Assembly: GCF_002113885.1 (NCBI RefSeq)
Contig: NW_018408909.1
Location: 842,005-901,206 of the forward strand
DNA: 59,202 nt
Direction of reading: 5' to 3'
Origin: Mizuhopecten yessoensis
Taxonomy: Eukaryota
In this document: positions 11,781 to 33,880 of the stretch, piece after piece
Position numbering within the stretch: position 1 is the first letter of the stretch
How the letters are laid out: the number at the start of each line of letters is the position of its first letter
The notes under the pieces: generated by a model
The model's input: only the letters and a program-made list of their open reading frames with translations
Databases searched by the model: none
What the model was told of the DNA's origin: nothing
Made by a program: the position numbers and the translations under genes

Positions 11781-12219
11781 AGTCATCAAAACAAGTGAAA
11801 TGACAATCAGATACTTACCATATCTATCTGTTGTCTGTTTCTATCTTCACTCGTGGTCATTAGAATCGTTTTGAAAAAATGCTGTCTTCCAAACACAACG
11901 GGCACCACCAGTGCGTGACAGATGCCGACTGATGACGGACAAACATGCAGCACAAGGTTTCCAAAGATGCAAGTTGATGAAGACAATGGACAATAGTCGT
12001 TTGCCCAATTTTTATCGATTTGGAGTTCGAATTACGTTTTTTTTAACATTTATGTATTCTCTGATTGATTTGTTTTCAATTCTACCGTAAAATCGACTCG
12101 CATATTTATTATGCCGACTACAGCGATATAGTGACTGTATTCAAGCACAAGACATGATACAAACTAAAATGTAAATTATCTCTACCCACTGGGTATAGTG
12201 TTATCTCTTAGTTATTAGC

Positions 12220-14160
12220 AGACGAGAGATTCATCATCTAGAGCCTTCAGGTATGGTTTTATCTCCAGGTCATTTTCTTATTGACAGACGGGAGACTCAT
12301 CATCTAAAGCCTTCAGGTATGGTTTTATCTCCAGGTCGTTTACTTATTGACAGACGGGAGACTCATCATCTAAAGCCTTCAGGTATGGTTTTATCTCCAG
12401 GTTATTTACTTATTGACAGACGGGAGACTCATCGTCTAGAGCCTTCAGGTATGGTTTTATCTCCATGTCATTTACTTATTGACAGACGGGAGACTTATCA
12501 TCTAGAGCCTTCAGGTATGGTTTTATCCCCAGGTCATTTACTTATTGACAGACGGGAGACTCATCGTCTAGAGCCTTCAGGTATGGTTTTATCTCTAGGT
12601 CATTAACTTATTAACAGACGGGAGACGCATCATCTAGAGCCTTCAGGTATGGTTTTGTCTCCAGGTCATTTACTTATTAACAGACGGGAGGCTTATCATC
12701 TAGACCCTCCAGGAATGGTTTTATCTCCAGGTCATTTACCTATTGACAGACGGGAGACTCATCATCTAGGGCCTTCAGGTATGGTTTTATCTCCAGGTCC
12801 TTTGCTTATTGACAGACGGGAGACTCATCATCTAAAGCCTTCAGGTATGGTTTTATCTCCAGGTCCTTTGCTTATTGACAGACGGGAGACTCATCATCTA
12901 GAGCCCTCAGGTATGGTTTTATCTCCAGGTCATTTTCTTATTGACAGACGGGAGACTCATCATCTAGGGCCTTCAGGTATGGTTTTATCTCCAGGTCCTT
13001 TGCTTATTGACAGACGGGAGACTCATCATCTAAAGCCTTCAGGTATGGTTTTATCTCCAGGTCCTTTGCTTATTGACAGACGGGAGACTCATCATCTAAA
13101 GCCTTCAGGTATGGTTTTATCTCCAGGTAATTTACTTATTGACAGACGGGAGACTCATCGTCTAGAGCCTTCAGGTATGGTTTTATCTCTAGGTCATTAA
13201 CTTATTAACAGACGGGAGACTCATCATCTAGAACCTTCAGGTATGGTTTTATCTCCAGGTAATTTACTTATTGACAGACGGGAGACTCATCGTCTAGAGC
13301 CTTCAGGTATGGTTTTATCTCCAGTTCATTTTCTTATTGACAGACGGGAGACTCATCATCTAAAGCCTTCAGGTATGGTTTTATCTCCAGGTAATTTACT
13401 TATTGACAGACGGGAGACTCATCATCTAAAGCCTTCAGGTATGGTTTTATCTCCAGGTTATTTACTTATTGACAGACGGGAGACTCATCATCTAAAGCCT
13501 TCAGGTATGGTTTTATCTCCAGGTCAGTTACTTATTGACAGACGGGAGACTCATCATCTAAAGCCTTCAGGTATGGTTTTATCTCCAGGTTATTTACTTA
13601 TTGACAGACGGGAGACTCATCGTCTAGAGCCTTCAGGTATGGTTTTATCTCTAGGTCATTAACTTATTAACAGACGGGAGACTCATCATCTAGAACCTTC
13701 AGGTATGGTTTTATCTCCAGGTAATTTACTTATTGACAGACGGGAGACTCATCGTCTAGAGCCTTCAGGTATGGTTTTATCTCCAAGTCATTAACTTATT
13801 AACAGACGGGAGACTCATCATCTAGAACCTTCAGGTATGGTTTTATCTCCAGGTCATTTTCTTATTGACAGACGGGAGACTCATCATCTAAAGCCTTCAG
13901 GTATGGTTTTATCTCCAGGTCATTAACTTATTGACAGACTGGAGACACATCATCTAGAGCCTTCAGGTATTGTTTTAATTCCAGGTCATGTACTTTTTGA
14001 CCGACAGGAGACACATCATCTAGAGCCTTCAGGTATGGTTTTATCTCCAGGTCATTTACTTATTAACAGACGGGAGACTTATCATCTAGACCCTCCAGGT
14101 ATGGTTTTATCTCCAGGTCATTTACCTATTAACAGACGGGAGACACATCATCTCCAGGTC
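12220..14160. repeat. 66-bp minisatellite, about 29 copies
   Basis: Unit gagactcatcatctagagccttcaggtatggttttatctccaggtcatttacttattgacagacgg. It produces the spurious 22-aa-repeat ORFs. Confidence 0.97.
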
Positions 14161-14979: not shown

Positions 14980-15695
14980 TATGTCCACATAATGTCACTT
15001 TAACTACAGCATCAAATACATTTATAAAGGCAAGATAAGGAGTGCTATATATAGTGCATATTACTTCCCATAATATTCCACGTAACGAGGAAACAGATGT
15101 ATGCTGCAGCTGTATCTATTACTAAATGTTAAAGACGCAGTCCCATGTGTGTGTCTAAGGTTCATCTCACGTGGTAGAAGTACGGATAGGGAAGACCGAC
15201 AGTGCCTAGTTTTCTGTGATATTTCCGAAGTATTCGATATAGTGTGGCATAGGGGGTTGGAAATGATTGGACTGTTTAATGGATTATGTATCTGGTAGAA
15301 AACAGCAGTTATTTTATGGATGTAGCAAATCTACAAACGCTGGGGTGCAACAGGGCTCAGTTCTTGGTCCTCTCTTGTTCATTATATATATTAATGATAT
15401 AACGGACAATATAGAGAGCCTAATGAAACTTTTTGCGGATGATACTTCTCTTTTGTGCTCGGATAAATGTCCACAGGTAATTGAACAGAAAATTAACAAT
15501 GATCTTTTAAATATCCAATCTTGGGCTGATAAGTGGTTGGCTAAGTTCAATCCTGCAAAAACAGAGGCAATGTTTTTTTCTTATACTGAACTGGATCACA
15601 TAATTGAAATAAATTTTAATGATGTAAGTATTGAATTTGTAGACTACCATAAGCATCTAGGAGTATTCATCGACTCAAATTGTATATGGAGCTAT

Positions 15696-15840
15696 TAGAG
15701 GATTGTATGTTATGATTAGTTTCTATACGTAATTCATGCTAATTATCATTGTGCAATTTACCACTACTTTGTGTGTCTTTTCAGACCGTGTTCATTGCCG
15801 AATAAACATATTTAAAGTAAACGGAACAGAGTCCCATTTA
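15696..15840 (+). repeat. Extra copy of the 5' LTR inside the duplicated segment 15423-16116
   Basis: Identical to 16391-16535. Part of a 694-bp duplication separated by a single N. Confidence 0.85.
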
Positions 15841-16390
15841 TGAACACGGTCGGAATACTGAACTCCATCATTGCCACATCACCACAATGCCAGCTGTAGC
15901 CTGCCCTATCACAGACTGCGACTATGTCACGGATGACCTGGATGCCACTATCGTCGCGGAACTCATCACGGCTCACTCCGCTGTACACATACCCAAACGA
16001 GAACACGCTGCTAAAGTTGAGAAAGTCAAGCGACCCACGCTCAGTGCCGCAGGATCTAGCGAGGAGTGGACATATTTCCAATCTCGGTGGTCGGACTATG
16101 TCAGTGCCACGAAAATNATGAAACTTTTTGCGGATGATACTTCTCTTTTGTGCTCGGATAAATGTCCACAGGTAATTGAACAGAAAATTAACAATGATCT
16201 TTTAAATATCCAATCTTGGGCTGATAAGTGGTTGGCTAAGTTCAATCCTGCAAAAACAGAGGCAATGTTTTTTTCTTATACTGAACTGGATCACATAATT
16301 GAAATAAATTTTAATGATGTAAGTATTGAATTTGTAGACTACCATAAGCATCTAGGAGTATTCATCGACTCAAATTGTATATGGAGCTAT

Positions 16391-16535
16391 TAGAGGATTG
16401 TATGTTATGATTAGTTTCTATACGTAATTCATGCTAATTATCATTGTGCAATTTACCACTACTTTGTGTGTCTTTTCAGACCGTGTTCATTGCCGAATAA
16501 ACATATTTAAAGTAAACGGAACAGAGTCCCATTTA
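16391..16535 (+). repeat. 5' LTR (145 bp)
   Basis: tagagg...cattta, with aataaa at 16496-16501. Direct repeat of 21009-21152. Confidence 0.93.
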
Positions 16536-16581
16536 TGAACACGGTCGGAATACTGAACTCCATCATTGCCACATCACCACA

Positions 16582-19077
16582 ATGCCAGCTGTAGCCTGCC
16601 CTATCACAGACTGCGACTATGTCACGGATGACCTGGATGCCACTATCGTCGCGGAACTCATCACGGCTCACTCCGCTGTACACATACCCAAACGAGAACA
16701 CGCTGCTAAAGTTGAGAAAGTCAAGCGACCCACGCTCAGTGCCGCAGGATCTAGCGAGGAGTGGACATATTTCCAATCTCGGTGGTCGGACTATGTCAGT
16801 GCCACGAAAATCACTGGACGCGATAAAGTAATCCTGCTACTAGAATGCTGTGACGAGCCATTACGGAAAGACTTGACACGATCAGCCGGTGGTAGCCTCG
16901 CTGACAAAACCATGGATGAGGTTTTAGCTGCAATTAAAAAGCTCGCAGTACGTGAGGAAAACACTATGGTTGCAAGAGTGACGCTACACAATATGCGACA
17001 GGATCGTGATGAAACTGTCCGGAGTTACGGTGCTAGACTTAAAGGACAGGCCGGTATATGCAAGTTTGTGATTAAGTGCCCCGGATGTACAGCCGACGTC
17101 AATTACACTGACGCTATCATGCGTGACGTACTCACCCGGGGAATTGCCGATCCGGAAATACAACTTGATCTGCTAGGACACAAAAATCAGGACATGAATC
17201 TTGAGGATGTATTTCAATTTGTCGAATCAAAGGAAGCCGGTAAACGTTCAGCTTCTAGACTTTCAGATTCTCATCCAGTTGAGGCTGCCAGCAGCTCATA
17301 CCGGAAAAGCAAGGCTGACAGACCGTCGTCCAAAGACACCTCCAACAAAGCAGAGCAATGTGCATATTGCGGAAAAAAGGGACACGGCAAGTCTGCCCTT
17401 GCTCGCATACGTAAAACAGAGTGTACAGCATATGGACACATATGTGGGCATTGCCATCGCGAACATCATTTTGAAATTGTATGTAGAAGCAAGGACAAAC
17501 CCAAAGTGACAGACCGTGATACACTTTCCGGAAGTGCTTTGTTCGACGCATTGTGCTCTGTTCATGATTCTCTACAACATCACCACTGTACCGTTAGTGA
17601 TTCTGGCATCGAACGCTCAATCTGCATCGACCACCATGTCTATGACGAACTGACGAATTCCTGGGTGAAACAACGCTCCAAGCCTCAACCATTCGTGAAC
17701 GTGACGGCTAAAGTTACTGCTGAGGACTACGCCGCCCTAGGCTTCAGACTAACACGAGACACCAGCAACGTCTCAATACAGGCTATGGCTGACACGGGAT
17801 GTCAGAGTTGCCTCGCTGGCTTGAAAGTAATCCGCCGCCTTGGTCTACGAGAATCAGAACTCATACCTGTAACGATGCAGATGCACACGGCTACATACGG
17901 TGGTATCAAAATTCTTGGGGCGACCATCCTTCGCTTGATTGGTAAAGACAAGGCAGGAAACACCAAGGAGACCAGACAGATGACATATGTCACAAGCTCA
18001 ACAGACAAGCTCTTCCTCAGTCGCGAAGCCTGCGCTGCATTAGGTATTATCCACGATTCATTTCCAACCGTCGGAGCTCAAGTCCCTTCAGCTAGCATAC
18101 ATGTCGATGCTACTTTCTCCTTACCGGATCACCAAGTCAAAGCATGCGATTGTCCTACACGCCAACTGCCACCACCGCCTCCGACAAAACTGCCTTTTCC
18201 TGCTACAACGGAAAACGTTGGTCACTTAAAAGGTTACCTTCTTGACCACTACAAGTCTAGCACATTCAACACATGTGAACACCAGACTTTACCACTCATG
18301 AATGGACCTCCCTTGAAGCTCATGGTGGACTCCAACGCGAAACCTGTCGCTCACCATACACCAGTACCCGTTCCAATCCACTGGCAGGGTGCAGTAAAGG
18401 CTGGACTAGACCAGGATGTTCGTTTGGGGGTTATTGAACCTGTTCCGGTTGGTGAGCCTGTCACTTGGTGCCATAGAATGGTTATTTGTGCGAAAAAGAA
18501 TGGTACACCTCGGCGCACTGTTGACTTCCAACCCTTAAATGCACATGCCACTCGCGAGACTCATCACACCCCTTCGCCATTCCACCAAGCCCGGTCTATT
18601 CCACATGGAAAGAAGAAGACATTATTTGATGCATGGAACGGTTATCACAGTGTACCCATCTGCAAAGAGGACAGACACTTGACCACGTTCATTACTCCTT
18701 GGGGGAGGTACCGTTACAAAACTGCACCCCAAGGCTACATTGCATCGGGCGACGGATACACCAGGCGCTATGACGAGCTTGTTTCGGACATCCCCAACAA
18801 AACCAAATGTGTCGACGATGTTTTTTTATGGTCAGACACTGTTGAAGAAAGCTTCTTTCAGGCAGTCCAGTGGCTTGACATATGCGGCCGTAACGGTATA
18901 ACGCTGAACCCTGACAAATTTGTATTTGCAGAGGACACACTCGAATTCGCTGGGTTTGAAATAACCAACGATAGTGTACGGCCTTCACAGAAATACCTAC
19001 GCGCCATCCTGGATTTTCCGACACCCAGGAACATCACAGATGTGCAGTCAATCAGGTGTCGTATGCCTTCAGTATGA
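16582..19077 (+). CDS. Gypsy Gag-protease-reverse transcriptase polyprotein (frameshifted at the end of RT)
   Basis: 831-aa ORF with two Cys/His knuckles (CAYCGKKGH..C; CGHCHREHHFEIVC), protease ADTGC, and RT motifs RRTVDF, DAWNGYH, TTFITPWGRYRY and CVDD. Confidence 0.9.
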   Translation: MPAVACPITDCDYVTDDLDATIVAELITAHSAVHIPKREHAAKVEKVKRPTLSAAGSSEEWTYFQSRWSDYVSATKITGRDKVILLLECCDEPLRKDLTRSAGGSLADKTMDEVLAAIKKLAVREENTMVARVTLHNMRQDRDETVRSYGARLKGQAGICKFVIKCPGCTADVNYTDAIMRDVLTRGIADPEIQLDLLGHKNQDMNLEDVFQFVESKEAGKRSASRLSDSHPVEAASSSYRKSKADRPSSKDTSNKAEQCAYCGKKGHGKSALARIRKTECTAYGHICGHCHREHHFEIVCRSKDKPKVTDRDTLSGSALFDALCSVHDSLQHHHCTVSDSGIERSICIDHHVYDELTNSWVKQRSKPQPFVNVTAKVTAEDYAALGFRLTRDTSNVSIQAMADTGCQSCLAGLKVIRRLGLRESELIPVTMQMHTATYGGIKILGATILRLIGKDKAGNTKETRQMTYVTSSTDKLFLSREACAALGIIHDSFPTVGAQVPSASIHVDATFSLPDHQVKACDCPTRQLPPPPPTKLPFPATTENVGHLKGYLLDHYKSSTFNTCEHQTLPLMNGPPLKLMVDSNAKPVAHHTPVPVPIHWQGAVKAGLDQDVRLGVIEPVPVGEPVTWCHRMVICAKKNGTPRRTVDFQPLNAHATRETHHTPSPFHQARSIPHGKKKTLFDAWNGYHSVPICKEDRHLTTFITPWGRYRYKTAPQGYIASGDGYTRRYDELVSDIPNKTKCVDDVFLWSDTVEESFFQAVQWLDICGRNGITLNPDKFVFAEDTLEFAGFEITNDSVRPSQKYLRAILDFPTPRNITDVQSIRCRMPSV

Positions 19078-20640
19078 CTGAGAATATGCTTCCTTTCCGT
19101 CAGTTGCTCAAACCAGATCAACCGTTTCAGTGGACTGAAGATCTCCAACGACTTTTTGAGGAATCTAAAATTGTCATTGCCAACGAGATTGAGCAGGGTG
19201 TACGGATTTTCGACCCAAGCAAATTGACGTGTCTCGCGACAGACTGGTCAAAGACTGGCATTTGATTTTGGTTGCTACAAAAACACTGCGCTTGTGCTAA
19301 TGAAAGCCTGCTATGCTGCCGTGATGGTTGGAAAGTTACACTCGTGGGTAGTCGGTTCACACATGCGGCAGAGACGCGTTACGCGCCGGTTGAGGGCGAG
19401 GCCATAGCAGTAGCAGATACCCTTGATAAAGCTCGCCACTTCGTTCTTGGGTGCGACAACTTGATCATAGCTGTTGATCATAAGCCATTGTTGAAGTTAT
19501 TTGGCGATAGATCACTGGAAAACATTCCTAACAACAGACTTCGTAACCTCAAGGAGAAAACACTACGATACCGCTTTCGAATGCTTCATGTGCCTGGCAT
19601 ACGACATCGTGCTGCGGATTGTATCTCCCGACATCCTATTGGTGAGCCTGAGAAACTTGTGCTCGAGGACGACATTGCAGCACTGTCATTTTCTGCCGTC
19701 GACATCGCCCACTTTGGTCTAATGAGTGGTCTACGCATGCCTTCATCAGGACTAGCATTTGTCGAGGAGCATGTCGTGGCATCAGCTTCTTCAACACTAG
19801 ATGCGATCAATTTACGATCCGTCACCTGGGAGCGCGTTAGAACCACTACTACCAGCGATGACAACATGCAGGCGTTAATCGCTCTGATAGAGGCCGGTAT
19901 ACCGGGAACCCGTCACGAGCTGCCTAGGCCACTGTCATCTGTAGCTTTTCCCCATAGTAACTGCCGTGCTGAAGTGGGAGTCAAAACAGTGAAGCGTCTG
20001 ATCACTGGCAACACCAGTCCCAATAGCGACTTAAACACCGACGCACTATTCTCCAGTATCGTAACACACCTGACAGGGACACAAAACTATCCCCTGCTAT
20101 GTGCGTGTTCGGTCGTCCTATACGAGACTTGATTCCTATACTACCCGGTCGGTACATTCCACACAACACTTTGCTGGAGACTTTAGCAGCTCGCGAGGAG
20201 GCTTTACAGAATCGTCACATGCGAGAAAGTGAACATTGGTCTGAACACACCAAACGCCTCTTACCTCTTGCAGTTGGAGATCATGTACGCATCCAAAATC
20301 AAGTTGGTCCTCACCCCCTTAAATGGGACAAGACTGGAATCATTACCGAAGTTCGCCAGTTTGATCAATATGTAGTTCGGGTTGACGGATCTGGCCGTGT
20401 TACTTTACGCAACAGGAAATTCCTCAGGAAGTATATCCCAGTCGGTACACCACCAGCGCGCTACACAATTGACAATCAAATTGGACTCTCCCATCGTACG
20501 ACGTCTCCTGCTTCTAACGCCCCAGACACCGTCGTCGGTGAAGAAAGCAACCCTCCCCGTAAGGATACGAGTCCTCCACCACCCTTCACCACCATTTGGT
20601 ATTCGAGACATCTTCAGTCGACGTCATCTAGCGTTTGATT
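19056..20640 (+). pseudogene. Disrupted Gypsy RNase H and integrase remnant
   Basis: LATDWSKTGI*, RYAPVEGEA, VDHKPL and AADCISRHP, then a jump to integrase PHSNCRAEVGVKTVKR and the C-terminal GDHVRIQNQ..KWDKTG..RNRKFLR. Contains an in-frame stop, frameshifts and lacks the HHCC/D,D region. Confidence 0.85.
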
Positions 20641-21008
20641 CTCCTGCAACCCCAGTGAGCAAAATCACCACACCCCCGGCAACGATGCAACCTATCTCGA
20701 CACATACGCCACAAGCAGTAGTTCCGTCCCCTGCACCGATCCGGACTTCTGGTCGTGCAACAAAGAAACCAGCTTGGCATTCAGATTATAAAATGGCCAA
20801 AGAACAATTGACTTGTTTCTACTTGGAACATTTCCTAAGTGTTATATCTGTTGTGCGACTTTTCACGGAGACTCAGTGCTACATTTTGTTTATTTTAGGA
20901 CAATTAGTCGGACATTTCTTAATAATTCTCATATTTCATATCAGTCTTTGTTCCTAGGACTAATACGAGTGACCCTATTACTTACGTGTACCAAAGACTT
21001 GGGGGAGA

Positions 21009-21152
21009 TAGAGGATTGTATGTTATGATTAGTTTCTATACGTAATTCACGCTAATTATCATTGTGCAATTACTACTACTTTGTGTGTCTTTTCAGACCG
21101 TGTTCATTGCTGAATAAACGTATTTAAAGTAAACGGAACAGAGTCCCATTTA
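21009..21152 (+). repeat. 3' LTR (144 bp)
   Basis: Follows the PPT. Differs from the 5' LTR by 4 substitutions and 1 indel. Confidence 0.93.
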
Positions 21153-22325
21153 GCTATCACATAGAACATATTAGTAAAAATGTAGCGAAACAATTAGGTG
21201 TCCTTCGTAAATTGAAATATATCCTTACTAGACGTACATTAAATAGAATATATAGAACCTGTATTCTTCCGGTTTTAGAATATTGCTGTGAACTCTGGGA
21301 CGGTTGTTCCGTTGCTGATGCAGAAAGGTTAGAAAAAAATACAACTTGAGGCTGGCCGTATAGCCACTGGTTTACCTTCTTATACCAGCAGACAATCTCT
21401 TTATAATGAAACGGGATGGGAACCTTTATCCCAACGACGCTCTCGTCGAAAGCTTCATTTGTTCTTTAAGATACACAACAATTTTACTCCTAACTATCTA
21501 AACACCCTACTCCCTCATGTTGTTGCTAATATTTCTCAGCACTATCTTCGCAATGCATCAAACTATAATTTGCCTGATAACAGACTAGAATCATCTAATA
21601 TATCGTTTCCCCCCTCTACAATAAGGTAGTGGAATCAATTACCCTTAGATATCAGGCACGATGTATCATTTTCAGCTTTTAAAAATTACATCCGTAACAC
21701 AGATTTACCCCAGGTACCTAACTTTTATTTCTATGGAGAAAGAAAAAAATATATCTTACATACAAGATTAAGAAATCAAGCAAGTGCATTGAAAAAACAC
21801 TTATTTAGATCTAATCTTGTCGCTGATCAAAATTGTCGCTGTGGCTATCCTAATGACGATAATTACCATTTCCTTTTTAACTGCAATACTTATGCTGAAC
21901 AAAGAATAACCCTCTTCCGTGAACTTAATGCATATATTCCTCTCACCGTTAATCTACTCTATTTTTGAGATACTAAATTATCTGAGCAGGAAAATGAATT
22001 AATCTTCATGCATACTCAGCAATATATTCATGATTCTAACAGATTTAAACCTCCCCTGCTCCCTCCCCTTCTTTCTATCTCTCTGTGCTATAGTTAAAAA
22101 TCAGGTTGTAATATAAGTTCAAATGTTTTTGTACCGATCCTTTCCGATGCTGACGGCACAAGAGAAACGGATATTCAAGGAAGAACGGAACGACAAGGAG
22201 GAAGCAAACCAAGGCAAGGGAGTGATGGACAATAGTACAAGCAGAACGTTTAGGAAAGTGTATAGTGTCAACTTCTGCCGTCAGTGTCGGAAAAGATTGT
22301 CCACATTATGAAAAAATGCATATTT

Positions 22326-25849: not shown

Positions 25850-28338
25850 TCTGTGTGTAGGGGCTGACCTGCGGAGGGTCGTGATAGAGGTGTTTGGTTT
25901 GGGGTGATATGGGGAGGGATGTGACCGAGGCCTGTGGAAAGGAAGTGTGACACGGGGAAGGTTTTGATACAGGCCTGTGGGTAGCGGCTGATACAGAGAG
26001 GGTTGCGATAGGGGCCTTTTGGTAGGAGCTGATTGTGAAATGATGCCTGGGGGAAGGGACTGATTATGAGATAAAGGCCAGTGGGTAGTGGGTGACATGG
26101 GGAGGGTTTTGATCACGGTCTATCGGTAGTGGCTGACATGGGGAGGGTTGTGATAGAGGCCTGTCGGTAGGGACTGACATGGGAAGGGTTGTGATAGAGG
26201 CCTGTCAGTAGGGGCTGACATGGGGAGGGTTGTGATAGAGACATATTGGTAGGGGCTGATTGTGAATGGAGGCCTGTTGGTAGGGGCTGATTGTAAATGG
26301 AGGCCTTTGGGTAGGGGCTGATTGTGAATGGGGGCCTTTGGGTAGGGGCTGATTGTGAATGGAGGCCTTTGGGTAGGGGTTGATTGTGAATGAAGGCCTT
26401 TTGGTAGGGGCTGATTGTGAATGGATGCCTTTGGGTAGGGGTTGATTGTGAATGGAGGCCTTTGGGTAGGGGCTGATTGAGAATGGATGCCTTTGGGTAG
26501 AGGTTGATTGTGAATGGAGGCCTTTGGGTAGGAGCTGATTGAGAATGGATGCCTTTGGGTAGGGGTTGATTGTGAATGGAGGCCTTTGGGTAGGGACTGA
26601 TTGAGAATGGAGGCCTTTGGGTAGGGGCTGATTGTGAATGGAGGCCTTTGGGTAGGGGCTGATTGTGAATGGGGGCCTTTGGGTAGGGGCTGATTGTGAA
26701 TGGAGGCCTTTGGGTAGGGGTTGATTGTGAATGAAGGCCTTTTGGTAGGGGCTGATTGTGAATGGATGCCTTTGGGTAGGGGTTGATTGTGAATGGAGGC
26801 CTTTGGGTAGGGGCTGATTGAGAATGGATGCCTTTGGGTAGGGGTTGATTGTGAATGGAGGCCTTTGGGTAGGGGCTGATTGAGAATGGAGGCCTTTGGG
26901 TAGGGGCTGATTGTGAATGGAGGCCTTTGGGTAGGGGCTGATTGTGAATGGAGGCCTTTGGGTAGGGGCTGATTGTGAATGGAGGCCTTTGGGTAGGGGC
27001 TGATTGTGAATGGAGGCCTTTGGGTAGGGGCTGATTGTGAATGGAGGCCTTTGGGTAGGGGCTGATTGTGAATGGAGGCCTTTGGGTAGGGGCTGATTGT
27101 GAATGGAGGCCTTTGGGTAGGGGCTGATTGTGAATGGAGGCCTTTGGGTAGGGGTTGATTGTGAATGGAGGCCTTTGGGTAGGGGCTGATTGTGAATGGA
27201 GGCCTTTGGGTAGGGGCTGATTGTGAATGGAGGCCTTTGGGTAGGGGCTGATTGTGAATGGAGGCCTTTGGGTAGGGGCTGATTGTGAATGGAGGCCTTT
27301 GGGTAGGGGCTGATTGTGAATGGAGGCCTTTGGGTAGGGGCTGATTGTGAATGGAGGCCTTTGGGTAGGGGCTGATTGTGAATGGAGGCCTTTGGGTAGG
27401 GGCTGATTGTGAATGGAGGCCTTTGGGTAGGGGTTGATTGTGAATGGAGGCCTTTGGGTAGGGGCTGATTGTGAATGGAGGCCTTTGGGTAGGGGCTGAT
27501 TGTGAATGGAGGCCTTTGGGTAGGGGCTGATTGTGAATGGATGCCTTTGGGTAGGGGTTGATTGTGAATGGAGGCCTTTGGGTAGGGGCTGATTGAGAAT
27601 GGAGGCCTTTGGGTAGGGGCTGATTGTGAATGAAGGCCTTTGGGTAGGGGCTGATTGTGAATGGATGCCTTTGGGGAGGGGGTGATTGTGAATAGAGGCC
27701 TTTGGGGAGGGGCTGATTGTGAATGGAGGCCTTAGGGTAGGGGTTGATTGTGAATAGAGGCCTTTGGGTAGGGGCTGATTGTGAATGGAGGCCTTTGGGT
27801 AGGGGCTGATTGTGAATGGAGGCCTTAGGGTAGGGGCTGATTGTGAATAGAGGCCTTTGGGTAGGGGCTGATTGTGAATGGATGCCTTTGGGAAGGGGTT
27901 GATTGTGAATGGAGGCCTTTGGGTAGGGGTTGATTGTGAATGGAGGACTTTGGGTAGGGGCTGATTGGGAATGGAGGCCTTTGGGTAGGGGCTGATTGTG
28001 AATAGAGGCCTTTGGGTAGGGGCTGATTGTGAATGGAGGCCTTTGGGTAGGGGCTGATTGTGAATAGAGGCCTTTGGGTAGGGGCTGATTGTTAATTGAT
28101 GCCTTTGGGTAGGGGTTGATTGTGAATGGAGGCCTTTGGGTAGGGGCTGATTGAGAATGGAGGCCTTTGGGTAGGGGCTGATTGTGAATGAAGGCCTTTG
28201 GGTAGGGGCTGATTGAGAATGGATGCCTTTGGGTAGGGGTTGATTGTGAATGGAGGCCTTTGGGTAGGGGCTGATTGTGAATGGAGGCTATTGGGTAGGG
28301 GCTGATTGTGAATGGAGGCCTTTGGGTAGGGGCTGATT
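25850..28338. repeat. G-rich 31-bp minisatellite (about 67 units from ~26250) with a degenerate longer-unit left edge
   Basis: Unit gaggcctttgggtaggggctgattgtgaatg. It explains the 757-aa minus-strand repeat ORF. Confidence 0.97.
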
Positions 28339-32000: not shown

Positions 32001-33294
32001 GATGGTATGTTTCCCAAACTATAGCTTCTCTCATGTCTTGACTGGGGTTGAAAACAGTCAATCATTTGTCTATTATGAGTTAGCCGCCATTCGTAATTAC
32101 TCAAATTGCAATCAGAAAGAAGTGGTGGCGAGGTTCAAAATTTCGTACTGGGATCGCATTGATTTAATACTTAACATTGAACATGTCTGATTTTAACTGA
32201 CAACAGCTGTTATAGCTAACATTTTCCCTAAAAGATAAAACATAATGAAAACAGATTGCAAATATAGGGATATCAATGCAAGATATGCTATTAGCACATA
32301 CGAATTTAATAATATAATGATACCTACACACTCTACATTTTAATATTGCAAATCCACCGTAGAATGTTATTTAGACGAAGCTCAGTTAAAACAAATGCAG
32401 TTGATATAATGTCACAGAATTACATCTTTGTTTTTAAAGCAAACTCTACATAGAGAACCTTCTCATACTTTACAAATCCCAACTGTGTACGGTGCAGGTG
32501 CCTGTCCGGTTCATCGTCGATTCCGATGCAGCTGAGTGTGAGGGTGTACATGTAAAAATATAAACTGATGCATTGAGAGACTCAATTGTTTTAATTTGTT
32601 AATAAATTTAATTATTTGTCCACCAAGCCGTTTTTATTGACATTTCTATAACATCGCCACGTTTTCTGAAAGGACAACGTCATTTCAATGATGAGCAGGT
32701 CTACCGGACATTGCGTCGGACATTGTAAGCACAAGTTAGGTCAGATTGAGCCGGTTTTTTTAGTGTTTTGTTTTCGTTTACAAATTAATGAGTTCTTAGT
32801 AAAAAGACTATTACTATTTTGAAAATGTTTGTAGATTTGTAGATTTGTATTTGTAGATAAAGTTCCCACCTTTCGATCCGTATAACATAAGAATATATTG
32901 TATTCCCTACACACACGAAGACATTGATTGGTGTATCAACCCGGAGAGGGTGGTTGAATCACCAGAAGTAGACATATATTTGAACAATGATTGCCTATGT
33001 GACTATTCAGAATAACTACCTAACAATCGACTTCTTTGCATACCAGGCTATATATTTTCTCATGTTGTATTACTCTTAATACACATGCTATACATTTTGC
33101 TATTCGTTCTTACGTTTAAATGAACACGGATAAATAAATCTTTTTTGACAGATATTCAAGACCTTCTTGTTTTTTGGTGTTTTGTGTGTTATTTTAATCA
33201 CAAAACAGCTGTTGAACTTTTTCATTTAAATTGTTTTATCAATGCAACGCTATTGTGGTAAAACTGAAGAGAATCGTACAAGCTACGAGGTTTT

Positions 33295-33880
33295 TAACCT
33301 CGCCATGTTTCCTCCGACTCACTATGGGCTATGGACTGTTAACATCTCCATGTTTCCTCCGACTCACTATGGGCTGTGGACTGTTAACATCGCCATGTTT
33401 CCCCCGACTCACTATGGGCTATGGACTGTTAACATCGCCATGTTTCCTCCGATTCACTATGGGCTATGGACTGTTAACATCACCATGTTTCCTCCGACTC
33501 ACTATGGGCTATGGACTGTTAACATCGCCATGTTTCCCCCGACACACTATGGGCTATGGACTGTTAACGTCGCCATGTTTTCTCCGACTCACTATGGGCT
33601 ATGGACTGTTAACATCGCCATGTTTCCTCGGACTCACTATGGGCTATGGACTGTTAACGTCGCCATGTTTTCTCCGACTCCCTATGGGCTATGGACTGTT
33701 AACATCCCCATGTTTCCCCCGACGCACTATGGGCTATGGACTGTTAACATCCCCATGTTTCCTCCGACTCACTATTGGCTATGGACTTGTAACATCGCCA
33801 TGTTTCCCCCGACACACTATGGGCTATGGACTGTTAACATCGCCATGTTTCCTCCGACTCACTATGGGCTATGGACTGTT
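33295..33880. repeat. 45-bp minisatellite, 13 copies, in CD36-like intron 1
   Basis: Unit cgccatgtttcctccgactcactatgggctatggactgttaacat. Confidence 0.96.

What the first reader, a model, noticed from the sequence alone, without database searches (positions are those of the whole stretch)
16475..16550. Gypsy element whose primer-binding site is complementary to its own LTR: predicted tRNA-independent self-priming
Seen: directly after the 5' LTR there is no TGG-starting tRNA PBS. Instead atgaacacggtc (16535-16546) is the exact reverse complement of gaccgtgttcat (16479-16490) inside the LTR, extendable to 15 of 16 pairs. The LTR partner begins right after an initiator-like ttcA and just upstream of the aataaa (16496), where the transcript 5' end would be expected. 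Established: S. pombe Tf1 self-primes by pairing the first 11 nt of its RNA with the PBS, and similar complementarity is described in related chromoviral elements. Inference: this element has a Mag-like double-knuckle Gag and no visible chromodomain, so it may represent a separate self-priming lineage in molluscs.
Basis: partly seen in the sequence, partly recalled or inferred. Interest (0 to 1): 0.82.

Follow-up and report, generated by a model that had tools for sequence, protein, structure and literature searches.

The report
Self-priming gypsy retrotransposon clade
This gypsy-type jumping gene appears to start copying its RNA into DNA with a piece of its own RNA instead of a host tRNA, a trick known from the yeast element Tf1; 13 related families in this genome, a mussel, a sea urchin and unidentified public samples carry the same signature.

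Summary
The element has 145-nt LTRs (16391-16535 and 21009-21152), a 5-bp target duplication (GCTAT) and a GGGGGAGA polypurine tract. The 11 nt directly after the 5' LTR (TGAACACGGTC, 16536-16546) are the exact reverse complement of LTR bases 16479-16489.

It is not chance. I found the same arrangement in 14 families in all:
- five more in this genome;
- one in the sea urchin Diadema antillarum;
- one in the mussel Mytilus edulis;
- six on public contigs of unknown host.

In each family the first 10-14 nt after the LTR pair with a segment 32-73 nt before the LTR end. The sequences differ between families. Nine of the 11 pairs show compensatory double changes, and 97% of cells are paired against 63% after shuffling. 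No primer-binding site starts with TGG. The partner always follows a pyrimidine-rich CAG that resembles an initiator.

The best reading is Tf1-like self-priming (about 0.8). The transcript start, the RNase H cut and the primer itself were not observed. The clade has no chromodomain and its LTRs are TA...TA rather than TG...CA, so it is not Steamer and does not look like Tf1/sushi. I could not build a labelled tree, so "Mag-like" remains untested. I found no report of this in the searchable literature.

The parts
16386..16390 (+). Target-site duplication GCTAT, left copy
   Evidence: The same 5 nt follow the 3' LTR at 21153-21157. All related elements with both flanks also have 5-bp duplications.
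16391..16535 (+). 5' LTR, 145 nt, starting TAGAGG and ending CATTTA (TA...TA termini, not TG...CA)
   Evidence: 96.5% identical to 21009-21152. The boundaries are set by the target duplication and the polypurine tract.
16473..16479 (+). Pyrimidine run plus CAG (TTTTCAG). Initiator-like; the predicted transcript start is A16478.
   Evidence: A pyrimidine run plus CAG lies 10-15 nt upstream of the primer's 3' end in all 14 families; one decayed 5' LTR copy reads CAT, with CAG in a sister copy's 3' LTR. The start site itself was not mapped.
16479..16489 (+). Predicted self-primer: GACCGTGTTCA in the LTR, followed by a conserved TTG
   Evidence: Exact complement of 16536-16546. It covaries with the primer-binding site across families.
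16496..16501 (+). AATAAA polyadenylation signal, between the primer segment and the LTR end
   Evidence: Read directly. AATAAA or ATTAAA lies in the same place in 8 of the 13 families tabulated.
16536..16546 (+). Primer-binding site TGAACACGGTC, abutting the LTR; no TGG
   Evidence: The anchored Watson-Crick run is 11 nt; 0 of 20,000 LTR shuffles reach it.
16582..19077 (+). gag-pol reading frame (Gag with Cys/His knuckles, protease, reverse transcriptase), open for 831 aa and then broken
   Evidence: A fuller copy (L032) has one 1516-aa frame with RVT_1, RNase H, Integrase_H2C2 and rve.
19272..20957 (+). Remnants of RNase H and integrase in shifted frames. Relative to copy L032 this copy lacks about 527 bp and about 60 bp.
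20993..21008 (+). Polypurine tract region AAAGACTTGGGGGAGA, ending at the 3' LTR
   Evidence: A G-rich purine run of the same kind (GGGGGAGA, GGGGGA, GAGGGGAGA and similar) precedes the 3' LTR in the related families.
21009..21152 (+). 3' LTR, 144 nt; carries the same primer segment at 21096-21106
21153..21157 (+). Target-site duplication GCTAT, right copy

Best explanation
This is a decayed copy of a Ty3/gypsy LTR retrotransposon belonging to a clade that primes minus-strand DNA synthesis with its own RNA, as Tf1 of fission yeast does.

The model runs as follows (every step is inferred from sequence; none was observed).
1. Transcription starts at or next to the conserved CAG in the LTR, predicted at A16478.
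2. The first roughly 12 nt of the RNA (GACCGTGTTCA, 16479-16489) fold back over a 46-nt loop that holds the rest of R and U5, including AATAAA.
3. They pair with the 11 nt immediately after the LTR (16536-16546).
4. The element's RNase H cuts after the ...CA of the 5' arm, before the conserved UUG.
5. The freed 3' end is extended into U5. That is why the LTR ends exactly one base before the helix.
6. Strong-stop DNA then transfers to the 3' R through the remaining roughly 30 nt of R.
7. During plus-strand synthesis the primer is copied back into the primer-binding site, which keeps the two arms perfectly Watson-Crick complementary.
For: 1. The inverted repeat is exact and anchored at the first base after the LTR.

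2. The same anchored complement (10-14 nt, 32-73 nt of loop) occurs in 14 of 14 families examined:
- A, this window;
- B, C, D and F in the same genome;
- a Logan contig, E;
- Diadema antillarum;
- Mytilus edulis;
- six other public contigs of unknown host.
In 11 of the 13 families tested the exact run is reached by at most 15 of 20,000 shuffles of that LTR. The two exceptions each have one mismatch in the 5' LTR, at a site where the 3' LTR copy pairs with the primer-binding site. In one of them the 3' LTR arm is a perfect 18-nt complement; in the other it carries a different mismatch.

3. Covariation, counted on MAFFT alignment A2:
- 97.2% of 143 cells are paired, against 62.9% after shuffling (0 of 500 shuffles reach it);
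- the covariation score is 0.918 against 0.21 (0 of 500);
- 9 of 11 pairs have changes on both sides;
- partners slid by 1-3 columns give 22-46% paired.
Pairs 1-10 are essentially always paired, pair 11 in 9 of 12 families, and pair 12 only in 6 of 12. The helix is therefore 10-11 bp long, like the 11 nt of Tf1 (PMC7175516).

4. Pairing is Watson-Crick only. There is one G.U in 143 cells, in a decayed copy. This fits a templated copy of the primer better than a merely structural helix.

5. No family has TGG; the sites start TGA, TGT or TGC. The 15-mer made of the primer-binding site plus 4 nt occurs 14 times in the 988-Mb genome: 13 are copies of the element and one lies on a small contig I could not inspect.

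6. The minimum-free-energy fold of the predicted leader contains the helix in all 12 families folded: 10 of 10 pairs in 11 families and 9 of 10 in one.

7. The flanking motifs are conserved: pyrimidine run plus CAG before the arm, CA|TTG after it, and ...TTA|TG at the LTR end.
Against: - No transcript 5' end, cleavage product or primer-linked cDNA was observed. The only public runs were unitig contigs, which cannot show starts.
- In one family (L057) the complementarity runs 6 nt upstream through the CAG. Either the start there lies further upstream or the extension is chance.
- Five of the 13 families tabulated have no canonical AATAAA or ATTAAA between the arm and the LTR end.
- A variant of this family with an imperfect helix (A at 16479, A at 16537, GT at 16546-7) is present in contigs of two runs guessed to be RNA.
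Internal tRNA fragments are excluded only by argument and by the 15-mer count.
Confidence: 0.8

Rival explanations
1. The helix is a conserved leader RNA structure with another role, such as packaging, dimerisation, or control of translation or polyadenylation. The real primer would be something not yet identified.
For: Covariation shows that the pairing is selected, not what it does. Retroviral leaders do contain conserved helices around the primer-binding site. The transcript start and the cleavage are unobserved.
Against: One end of the helix coincides to the base with the LTR/internal boundary in all 14 families. That boundary is where the primer's 3' end must sit in any LTR element. No other primer-binding site exists there, since none starts TGG. 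Pairing is almost exclusively Watson-Crick with no wobble, which is unusual for a purely structural RNA helix. The helix length (10-11 bp) matches Tf1's primer (PMC7175516).
Confidence: 0.1
2. Priming is by a host tRNA, a tRNA half or a tRNA fragment. The LTR segment would then be a mimic or a coincidence.
For: Copia and Ty5 use internal tRNA segments (my own knowledge). Half-tRNA primer-binding sites are also reported in plant copia lineages (PMC6317226). The host tRNA set was not fully checked.
Against: The sites differ between families (for example TGAACACGGTC, TGATCACAGTCA, TGACTGCTAC, TGTTTAATGTG, TGAAGAAGATC, TGATAGATATAAC), and each matches its own LTR. None starts TGG. Several are too AT-rich to look like tRNA. 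The 15-mer of this family is found only in element copies, apart from one site on a small contig I could not inspect. No tRNA lies in the window. The single tRNA in all fetched loci does not match.
Confidence: 0.03
3. Priming occurs in trans. The 5' segment of a second, co-packaged copy of the RNA, or a short LTR-derived RNA, anneals to the primer-binding site. This is a variant of self-priming, not a different class.
For: Sequence data cannot tell pairing within one molecule from pairing between two. The loops are short (32-73 nt).
Against: The minimum-free-energy fold of a single leader forms the helix in all 12 families folded. Tf1 is described as folding back on itself (PMC7175516).
Confidence: 0.06
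4. The inverted repeat is a chance match.
For: None beyond its short length.
Against: Expected 0.01 times per window. 0 of 20,000 shuffles reach it. It recurs with different sequence in 13 other families.
Confidence: 0.005

Closest known systems
Tf1, Tf2 (Schizosaccharomyces pombe) and Tj1 (S. japonicus): self-primed Ty3/gypsy elements
   Same: The primer-binding site abuts the 5' LTR and is complementary to about 11 nt of the element's own LTR transcript. In Tf1 these are the first 11 bases, and RNase H cuts between bases 11 and 12 (PMC7175516, PMC4600332). There is no tRNA complementarity, gag and pol are in a single frame, and the target duplication is 5 bp. Here the helix is 10-11 bp and anchored in the same way.
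   Different: No chromodomain was detected. The LTRs end TA...TA, not TG...CA. The loop between the arms is short (32-73 nt). The pairing seems to begin 1-5 nt after the predicted start rather than at base 1. The hosts are marine animals. Nothing here has been tested biochemically.
Sushi-group chromoviruses of vertebrates, the Tcn1 clade (fungi and non-seed plants) and the plant Ty1/copia TAR lineage: all predicted self-primers
   Same: In each, self-priming is inferred from sequence complementarity between the site after the LTR and the LTR (PMC6317226, PMC4600332).
   Different: Sushi LTRs are TGT...ACA (PMC3601003, Table 3), and that group carries chromodomains. TAR belongs to a different superfamily. 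None of these reports covers molluscs or echinoderms, and I found no such report in the library.
Steamer and Steamer-like elements (Mag lineage, C-clade) of bivalves
   Same: They are compact, about 5 kb, with a single gag-pol frame, two Cys/His knuckles, LTRs of 150-220 nt and hosts in marine invertebrates (PMC11046912, PMC8905726). Cross-phylum transfer of Steamer-like elements is from my own knowledge.
   Different: Steamer LTRs start TGTAACA and end AAACA. Its primer-binding site is TGGTGTCAGAAG, which matches tRNA-Leu (PMC8905726). The clade described here has TA...TA LTRs and no tRNA site.
Copia and Ty5 (priming by an internal tRNA segment) and GalEa 'conserved hairpin site' elements
   Same: These too lack a canonical TGG site that matches a tRNA 3' end.
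   Different: They still depend on a host tRNA fragment, or have an unexplained internal hairpin (PMC6934838). Here the partner of the site lies inside the element's own LTR and covaries with it.

Membership tests
Self-priming LTR retrotransposons (functional class defined by Tf1) | The sequence directly 3' of the 5' LTR is complementary to a segment of the same element's LTR transcript | tested here: met
   11 of 11 pairs in the window. The same holds in 14 of 14 families, with compensatory changes.
Self-priming LTR retrotransposons (functional class defined by Tf1) | No complementarity to a tRNA 3' end (no TGG site) | tested here: met
   The sites start TGA, TGT or TGC in all families. The 15-mer occurs only in element copies in the genome, apart from one site on a small contig I could not inspect. 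The full tRNA set was not checked.
Self-priming LTR retrotransposons (functional class defined by Tf1) | The complementary segment lies at the 5' end of the mRNA | tested here: inconclusive
   An initiator-like pyrimidine run plus CAG is conserved directly upstream. The public runs are contigs only and show no starts.
Self-priming LTR retrotransposons (functional class defined by Tf1) | RNase H cleaves the RNA duplex to release the primer, and the cDNA is joined to that primer | not testable with these tools
   This needs biochemistry. The only indirect hints are that the LTR boundary coincides with the helix end and that CA|TTG is conserved.
Tf1/sushi chromovirus clade (phylogenetic membership) | Chromodomain at the integrase C-terminus | tested here: not met
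   There is no Chromo hit in the 1516-aa, 1588-aa or 1600-aa polyproteins, nor in the last 309 aa, even at E up to 1.
Tf1/sushi chromovirus clade (phylogenetic membership) | LTR termini TG...CA (sushi: TGTYANR...CNTNACA; PMC3601003) | tested here: not met
   All 14 families have TA...TA termini, fixed by the 5-bp target duplications.
Tf1/sushi chromovirus clade (phylogenetic membership) | Groups with Tf1 and sushi in a reverse transcriptase/integrase tree | not testable with these tools
   No labelled Tf1, sushi or Mag sequences could be obtained. Searching solved structures finds only Ty3 as the best hit.
   The LTRs are TA...TA and there is no tRNA site.
   The frames are single, 1516-1600 aa long. 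Gag has CX2CX4H-type and CX2CX4HX5C motifs. These features are not exclusive to the Mag lineage.
Ty3/gypsy (Metaviridae) | Domain order protease, reverse transcriptase, RNase H, integrase; LTRs; polypurine tract; short target duplication | tested here: met
   Pfam order RVT_1, RT_RNaseH, Integrase_H2C2, rve. The best solved-structure hit is Ty3. For the LTRs, polypurine tract and target duplication.

The most novel reading that the evidence does not exclude
The TA...TA clade may lie outside the Tf1/sushi chromoviruses. In that case tRNA-independent self-priming either arose independently or survived from an ancestral state in a large, currently active group of marine-invertebrate gypsy elements. 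Freedom from a host tRNA primer would also make these elements blind to defence by 3' tRNA fragments. It could help explain why near relatives (66-83% amino-acid identity across reverse transcriptase to integrase) sit in molluscs, echinoderms and cnidarians. The bivalve 'TRIM' elements that lack a recognisable primer-binding site and share the GGGGAGA polypurine tract could be its non-autonomous riders.
Probability: 0.35. Interest if true: 0.75.

Novelty: new member of a known kind. Interest (0 to 1): 0.58.

Why it matters
Self-priming has been shown experimentally only for Tf1 and its fission-yeast relatives (Tj1 was shown to be active in S. pombe). Elsewhere it is inferred, mainly for the Tf1/sushi and Tcn1 chromoviruses and for one plant copia lineage.

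Here the same signature, with unusually clean covariation, marks a diverse clade: 67 clusters at 80% identity among only the 78 best full-length hits. It occurs in marine invertebrates and includes very young insertions.

Three consequences follow.
- It gives an animal setting in which the mechanism, the RNase H cut of an RNA duplex and the re-copying of the primer-binding site can be studied.
- It gives annotators a rule for elements that LTR finders flag as having no primer-binding site: TA...TA LTRs, TG(not G) after the LTR, and the complement about 45-85 nt upstream.
- It bears on whether tRNA priming or hairpin priming is ancestral for LTR elements, a question raised in PMC3601003.

Tried and rejected
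1. Mapping the transcript start from public reads. The search for runs found 20 holders, none on record as RNA, all kept as Logan contigs. Laying four of them showed only contigs that run from the polypurine tract through the LTR to the primer-binding site, as expected when a repeat collapses in assembly. A contig break at 16478/16479 is explained by a G/A variant, not by a start. There was no verdict on the start or on the polyadenylation site.

2. Fetching the host tRNA set. ARAGORN on the window and on all loci found one unrelated tRNA.

3. Lineage assignment.
- Pfam has no models at lineage level.
- Solved structures give only Ty3.
- Source names of homologues are 'uncharacterized'.
- The ESM Atlas gave only generic gag/protease clusters below the reliable score.
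No labelled tree was built.

4. More distant relatives in this genome (40-52% identity: L043, L044, L049, L048, L040). Their 5' ends are decayed or missing and gave no readable LTR or primer-binding site. L046 turned out to be another copy of family D, with a truncated 5' LTR. The sea anemone locus L055 also lacks a recognisable 5' LTR. How far beyond the clade the trait reaches is therefore unknown.

5. Variation among the 23 copies of this family. It is mostly scattered decay and says little about selection.

6. Rfam. There was no match in 16300-16700.

7. Steamer identity. Rejected from the published LTR and primer-binding-site features.

8. I considered reading the pyrimidine run plus CAG as a 3' splice acceptor rather than an initiator. 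I cannot exclude it, but it would not explain why the complementarity begins there.

Full report
**1. What is at the coordinates**

Self-comparison of the window gives one LTR pair, 16391-16535 and 21009-21152 (145 and 144 nt, 96.5% identical). The pair is flanked by the 5-bp direct repeat GCTAT (16386-90 and 21153-57). The tract AAAGACTTGGGGGAGA ends at 21008, directly before the 3' LTR. The element is therefore 4762 bp long, with LTRs that start TAGAGG and end CATTTA. It lies inside a LINE-like reverse transcriptase gene.

Its coding region begins at ATG 16582 and is open for 831 aa. After that it breaks into shifted pieces. Compared with a fuller 5381-bp copy elsewhere in the genome (L032), it lacks about 527 bp and about 60 bp. 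L032 has one 1516-aa frame with reverse transcriptase, RNase H, the integrase zinc domain and the integrase core, in the Ty3/gypsy order. The best solved-structure match is Ty3.

The stretch 15423-16116 is an exact duplicate of 16118-16811 on either side of a single N. I take it for an assembly artefact.

**2. The observation**

GACCGTGTTCAT (16479-16490) and its exact reverse complement (16535-16546) are there. A 12-mer is expected 0.01 times per window. The LTR ends at A16535, so the primer-binding site proper is TGAACACGGTC (16536-16546). This 11-mer is complementary to 16479-16489.

There is no TGG. AATAAA is at 16496-16501. The LTR arm directly follows TTTTCAG.

**3. Is it selected?**

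The family has at least 41 LTR matches in the 988-Mb genome, 87-100% identical. Differences among these copies look like decay and say little.

Other families are more informative. A protein search of the same genome found sister families at 76%, about 70%, 58% and lower identity. I fetched them and defined their LTRs by self-alignment and by their 5-bp target duplications. In each, the bases right after the LTR are the exact complement of a segment near the 3' end of that family's own LTR, and the sequence differs from family to family:

| Family | Primer-binding site | LTR partner |
|---|---|---|
| A (this window) | TGAACACGGTC | GACCGTGTTCA |
| B | TGAACACAGT | ACTGTGTTCA |
| C | TGATCACAGTCA | TGACTGTGATCA |
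| D | TGACTGCTAC | GTAGCAGTCA |

A search of the large protein collection showed that the clade is very diverse. The 120 best hits are 66-83% identical to the query, and the 78 full-length ones fall into 67 clusters at 80% identity. I fetched the DNA around ten of these hits. Nine of them carry the same arrangement; the tenth, the sea-anemone locus L055, has no recognisable 5' LTR (section 6):
- Diadema antillarum: TGAACACGGTAT pairs with ATACCGTGTTCA, and the two LTRs are 100% identical.
- Mytilus edulis: TGATGGAGAT pairs with ATCTCCATCA.
- Seven contigs of unknown host, for example TGTTTAATGTG, TGATGACAGTAC, TGAAGAAGATC, TGCTCACATCT and TGATAGATATAACT.

Two families show one mismatch in the 5' LTR. 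In both, the 3' LTR copy pairs with the primer-binding site at that position. These are private substitutions of old copies.

The numbers:
- The anchored Watson-Crick run is 10-14 nt in 11 of 13 families. It is reached by at most 15 of 20,000 shuffles of the same LTR.
- On a MAFFT alignment of 13 leaders, 97.2% of 143 cells pair, against 62.9% after shuffling (0 of 500).
- The covariation score is 0.918 against 0.21 (0 of 500).
- Nine of 11 pairs have changes on both sides (49 cells).
- Sliding the partner by 1-3 columns drops pairing to 22-46%.
- Pairs 1-10 are essentially always formed, pair 11 in 9 of 12 families, and pair 12 only in 6 of 12.

**4. Anatomy shared by the clade**

- The LTRs are 93-391 nt long with TA...TA termini.
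- The target duplications are 5 bp.
- A G-rich purine run (GGGGGAGA or a close variant) lies before the 3' LTR.
- The 5' arm ends in CA and is followed by TTG in most families.
- The 5' arm lies 10-15 nt after a pyrimidine run plus CAG. This fits the metazoan initiator pattern with the A as +1.
- The loop between the arms is 32-73 nt and often holds AATAAA.
- The LTR ends ...TTA, CTA or ATA, and the next bases are TG followed by A, T or C, never G.
- The minimum-free-energy fold of each predicted leader contains the helix.
- Rfam has nothing there.

**5. Mechanism**

In any LTR element the base after the 5' LTR is where the 3' end of the minus-strand primer anneals. Here that base is the first base of a helix whose other strand is the element's own LTR, and the two strands covary.

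The simplest reading is the Tf1 mechanism. [quoted passage not shown]

The near-total absence of G.U pairs fits a site that is re-copied from the primer at every cycle. That point is inference.

What is shown: the complementarity, its anchoring, its covariation and the absence of a tRNA-type site.

What is inferred: the transcript start at the CAG, the cut after CA, and strand transfer through the remaining R.

**6. What could not be settled**

- Transcript start. The public runs that hold the sequence are kept only as contigs and are not on record as RNA.
- Host tRNAs. The 15-mer made of the primer-binding site plus 4 nt occurs 14 times in the genome: 13 in copies of the element and one on a small contig I could not inspect.
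- Lineage. No chromodomain was found, and the LTR ends are unlike those tabulated for Mag A, Mag C, CsRN1, sushi and rGmr1 (PMC3601003). Steamer has TGT...ACA LTRs and a tRNA-Leu site (PMC8905726). The clade is therefore not Steamer and does not look like Tf1/sushi. I could not bring labelled references into a tree, so 'Mag-like' is untested.
- Outer limit of the trait. More distant relatives in this genome and the sea-anemone locus had no readable 5' end.

**7. Comparison with what is known, and novelty**

Self-priming has been shown for Tf1. It has been predicted for other fungal elements, for vertebrate sushi elements, for the Tcn1 clade and for the plant copia TAR lineage (PMC6317226, PMC4600332, PMC6934838).

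Full-text searches found no paper that links self-priming with mollusc or sea-urchin LTR elements. The library lacks most subscription journals.

An earlier first-reader note of this scan (s1-508001) reports a gypsy element with 93-bp TA...TA LTRs and an apparent self-priming site elsewhere in this genome. That matches my family D, though I did not check the same locus.

I class the finding as a new member of a known kind: the same mechanism in a large clade that had not been recognised for it.

The copies were only compared.

Noticed in passing
window 15423-16116 and 16118-16811: Two stretches of 694 bp, 100% identical, flank the single N at 16117. This looks like an assembly or scaffolding duplicate of a contig end, not a real tandem copy. 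It duplicates the LINE fragment, the 5' LTR, the primer-binding site and the start of gag.
   Followed up: partly
window 16118-16390 and 21158 onward: The element sits inside a reverse transcriptase gene of non-LTR (LINE-like) type. The frame with an FADD motif continues across the insertion once the element and one copy of GCTAT are removed.
   Followed up: no
window about 26110-28200: A long satellite with a 31-bp period: at least 67 copies, about 90% alike.
   Followed up: no
window 12208-14153; also 996-1910 and 33292-33880: Three further tandem arrays. Judging from self-alignment offsets, the periods are about 66 bp, about 145 bp and about 45 bp.
   Followed up: no
proteins P0009, P0082, P0011 and P0110; locus L054: Polyproteins 66-83% identical over reverse transcriptase to integrase occur in Diadema antillarum, Mytilus edulis and a sea anemone (Actinostola). 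The Diadema copy has 100% identical LTRs. Others are filed under bacterial symbiont bins (Candidatus Thiodiazotropha endolucinida; an endosymbiont of Escarpia), which are probably host DNA binned by mistake. Identity this high across phyla suggests horizontal transfer, as reported for Steamer-like elements.
   Followed up: partly
literature: PMC6934838 (biv-TRIM): The bivalve TRIM elements have no identifiable tRNA primer-binding site, no known autonomous partner, and the polypurine tract GGGGAGA. That is the same tract that precedes the LTR in this clade. They may be non-autonomous riders that use the same self-priming. I did not compare the sequences.
   Followed up: no
window 16479, 16537, 16546-16547; locus L012: A variant with A at 16479, A at 16537 and GT at 16546-7 has a weakened helix. 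It is the only form, or the major form, in contigs of two independent runs guessed to be RNA (X4, X8), and it matches genomic copy L012. It may be a decayed copy transcribed by read-through.
   Followed up: partly
all 14 families: Just outside the helix, CA|TTG after the 5' arm and ...T(T/C/A)TA|TG at the LTR end are conserved. Many predicted leaders also contain two small hairpins inside the loop, which recalls the U5-IR stem-loop required by Tf1. I did not test these hairpins for covariation.
   Followed up: no
locus L015 (copy of this family): One copy has an 8-nt duplication (GTGTTCAT) inside the primer segment of its LTR.
   Followed up: no
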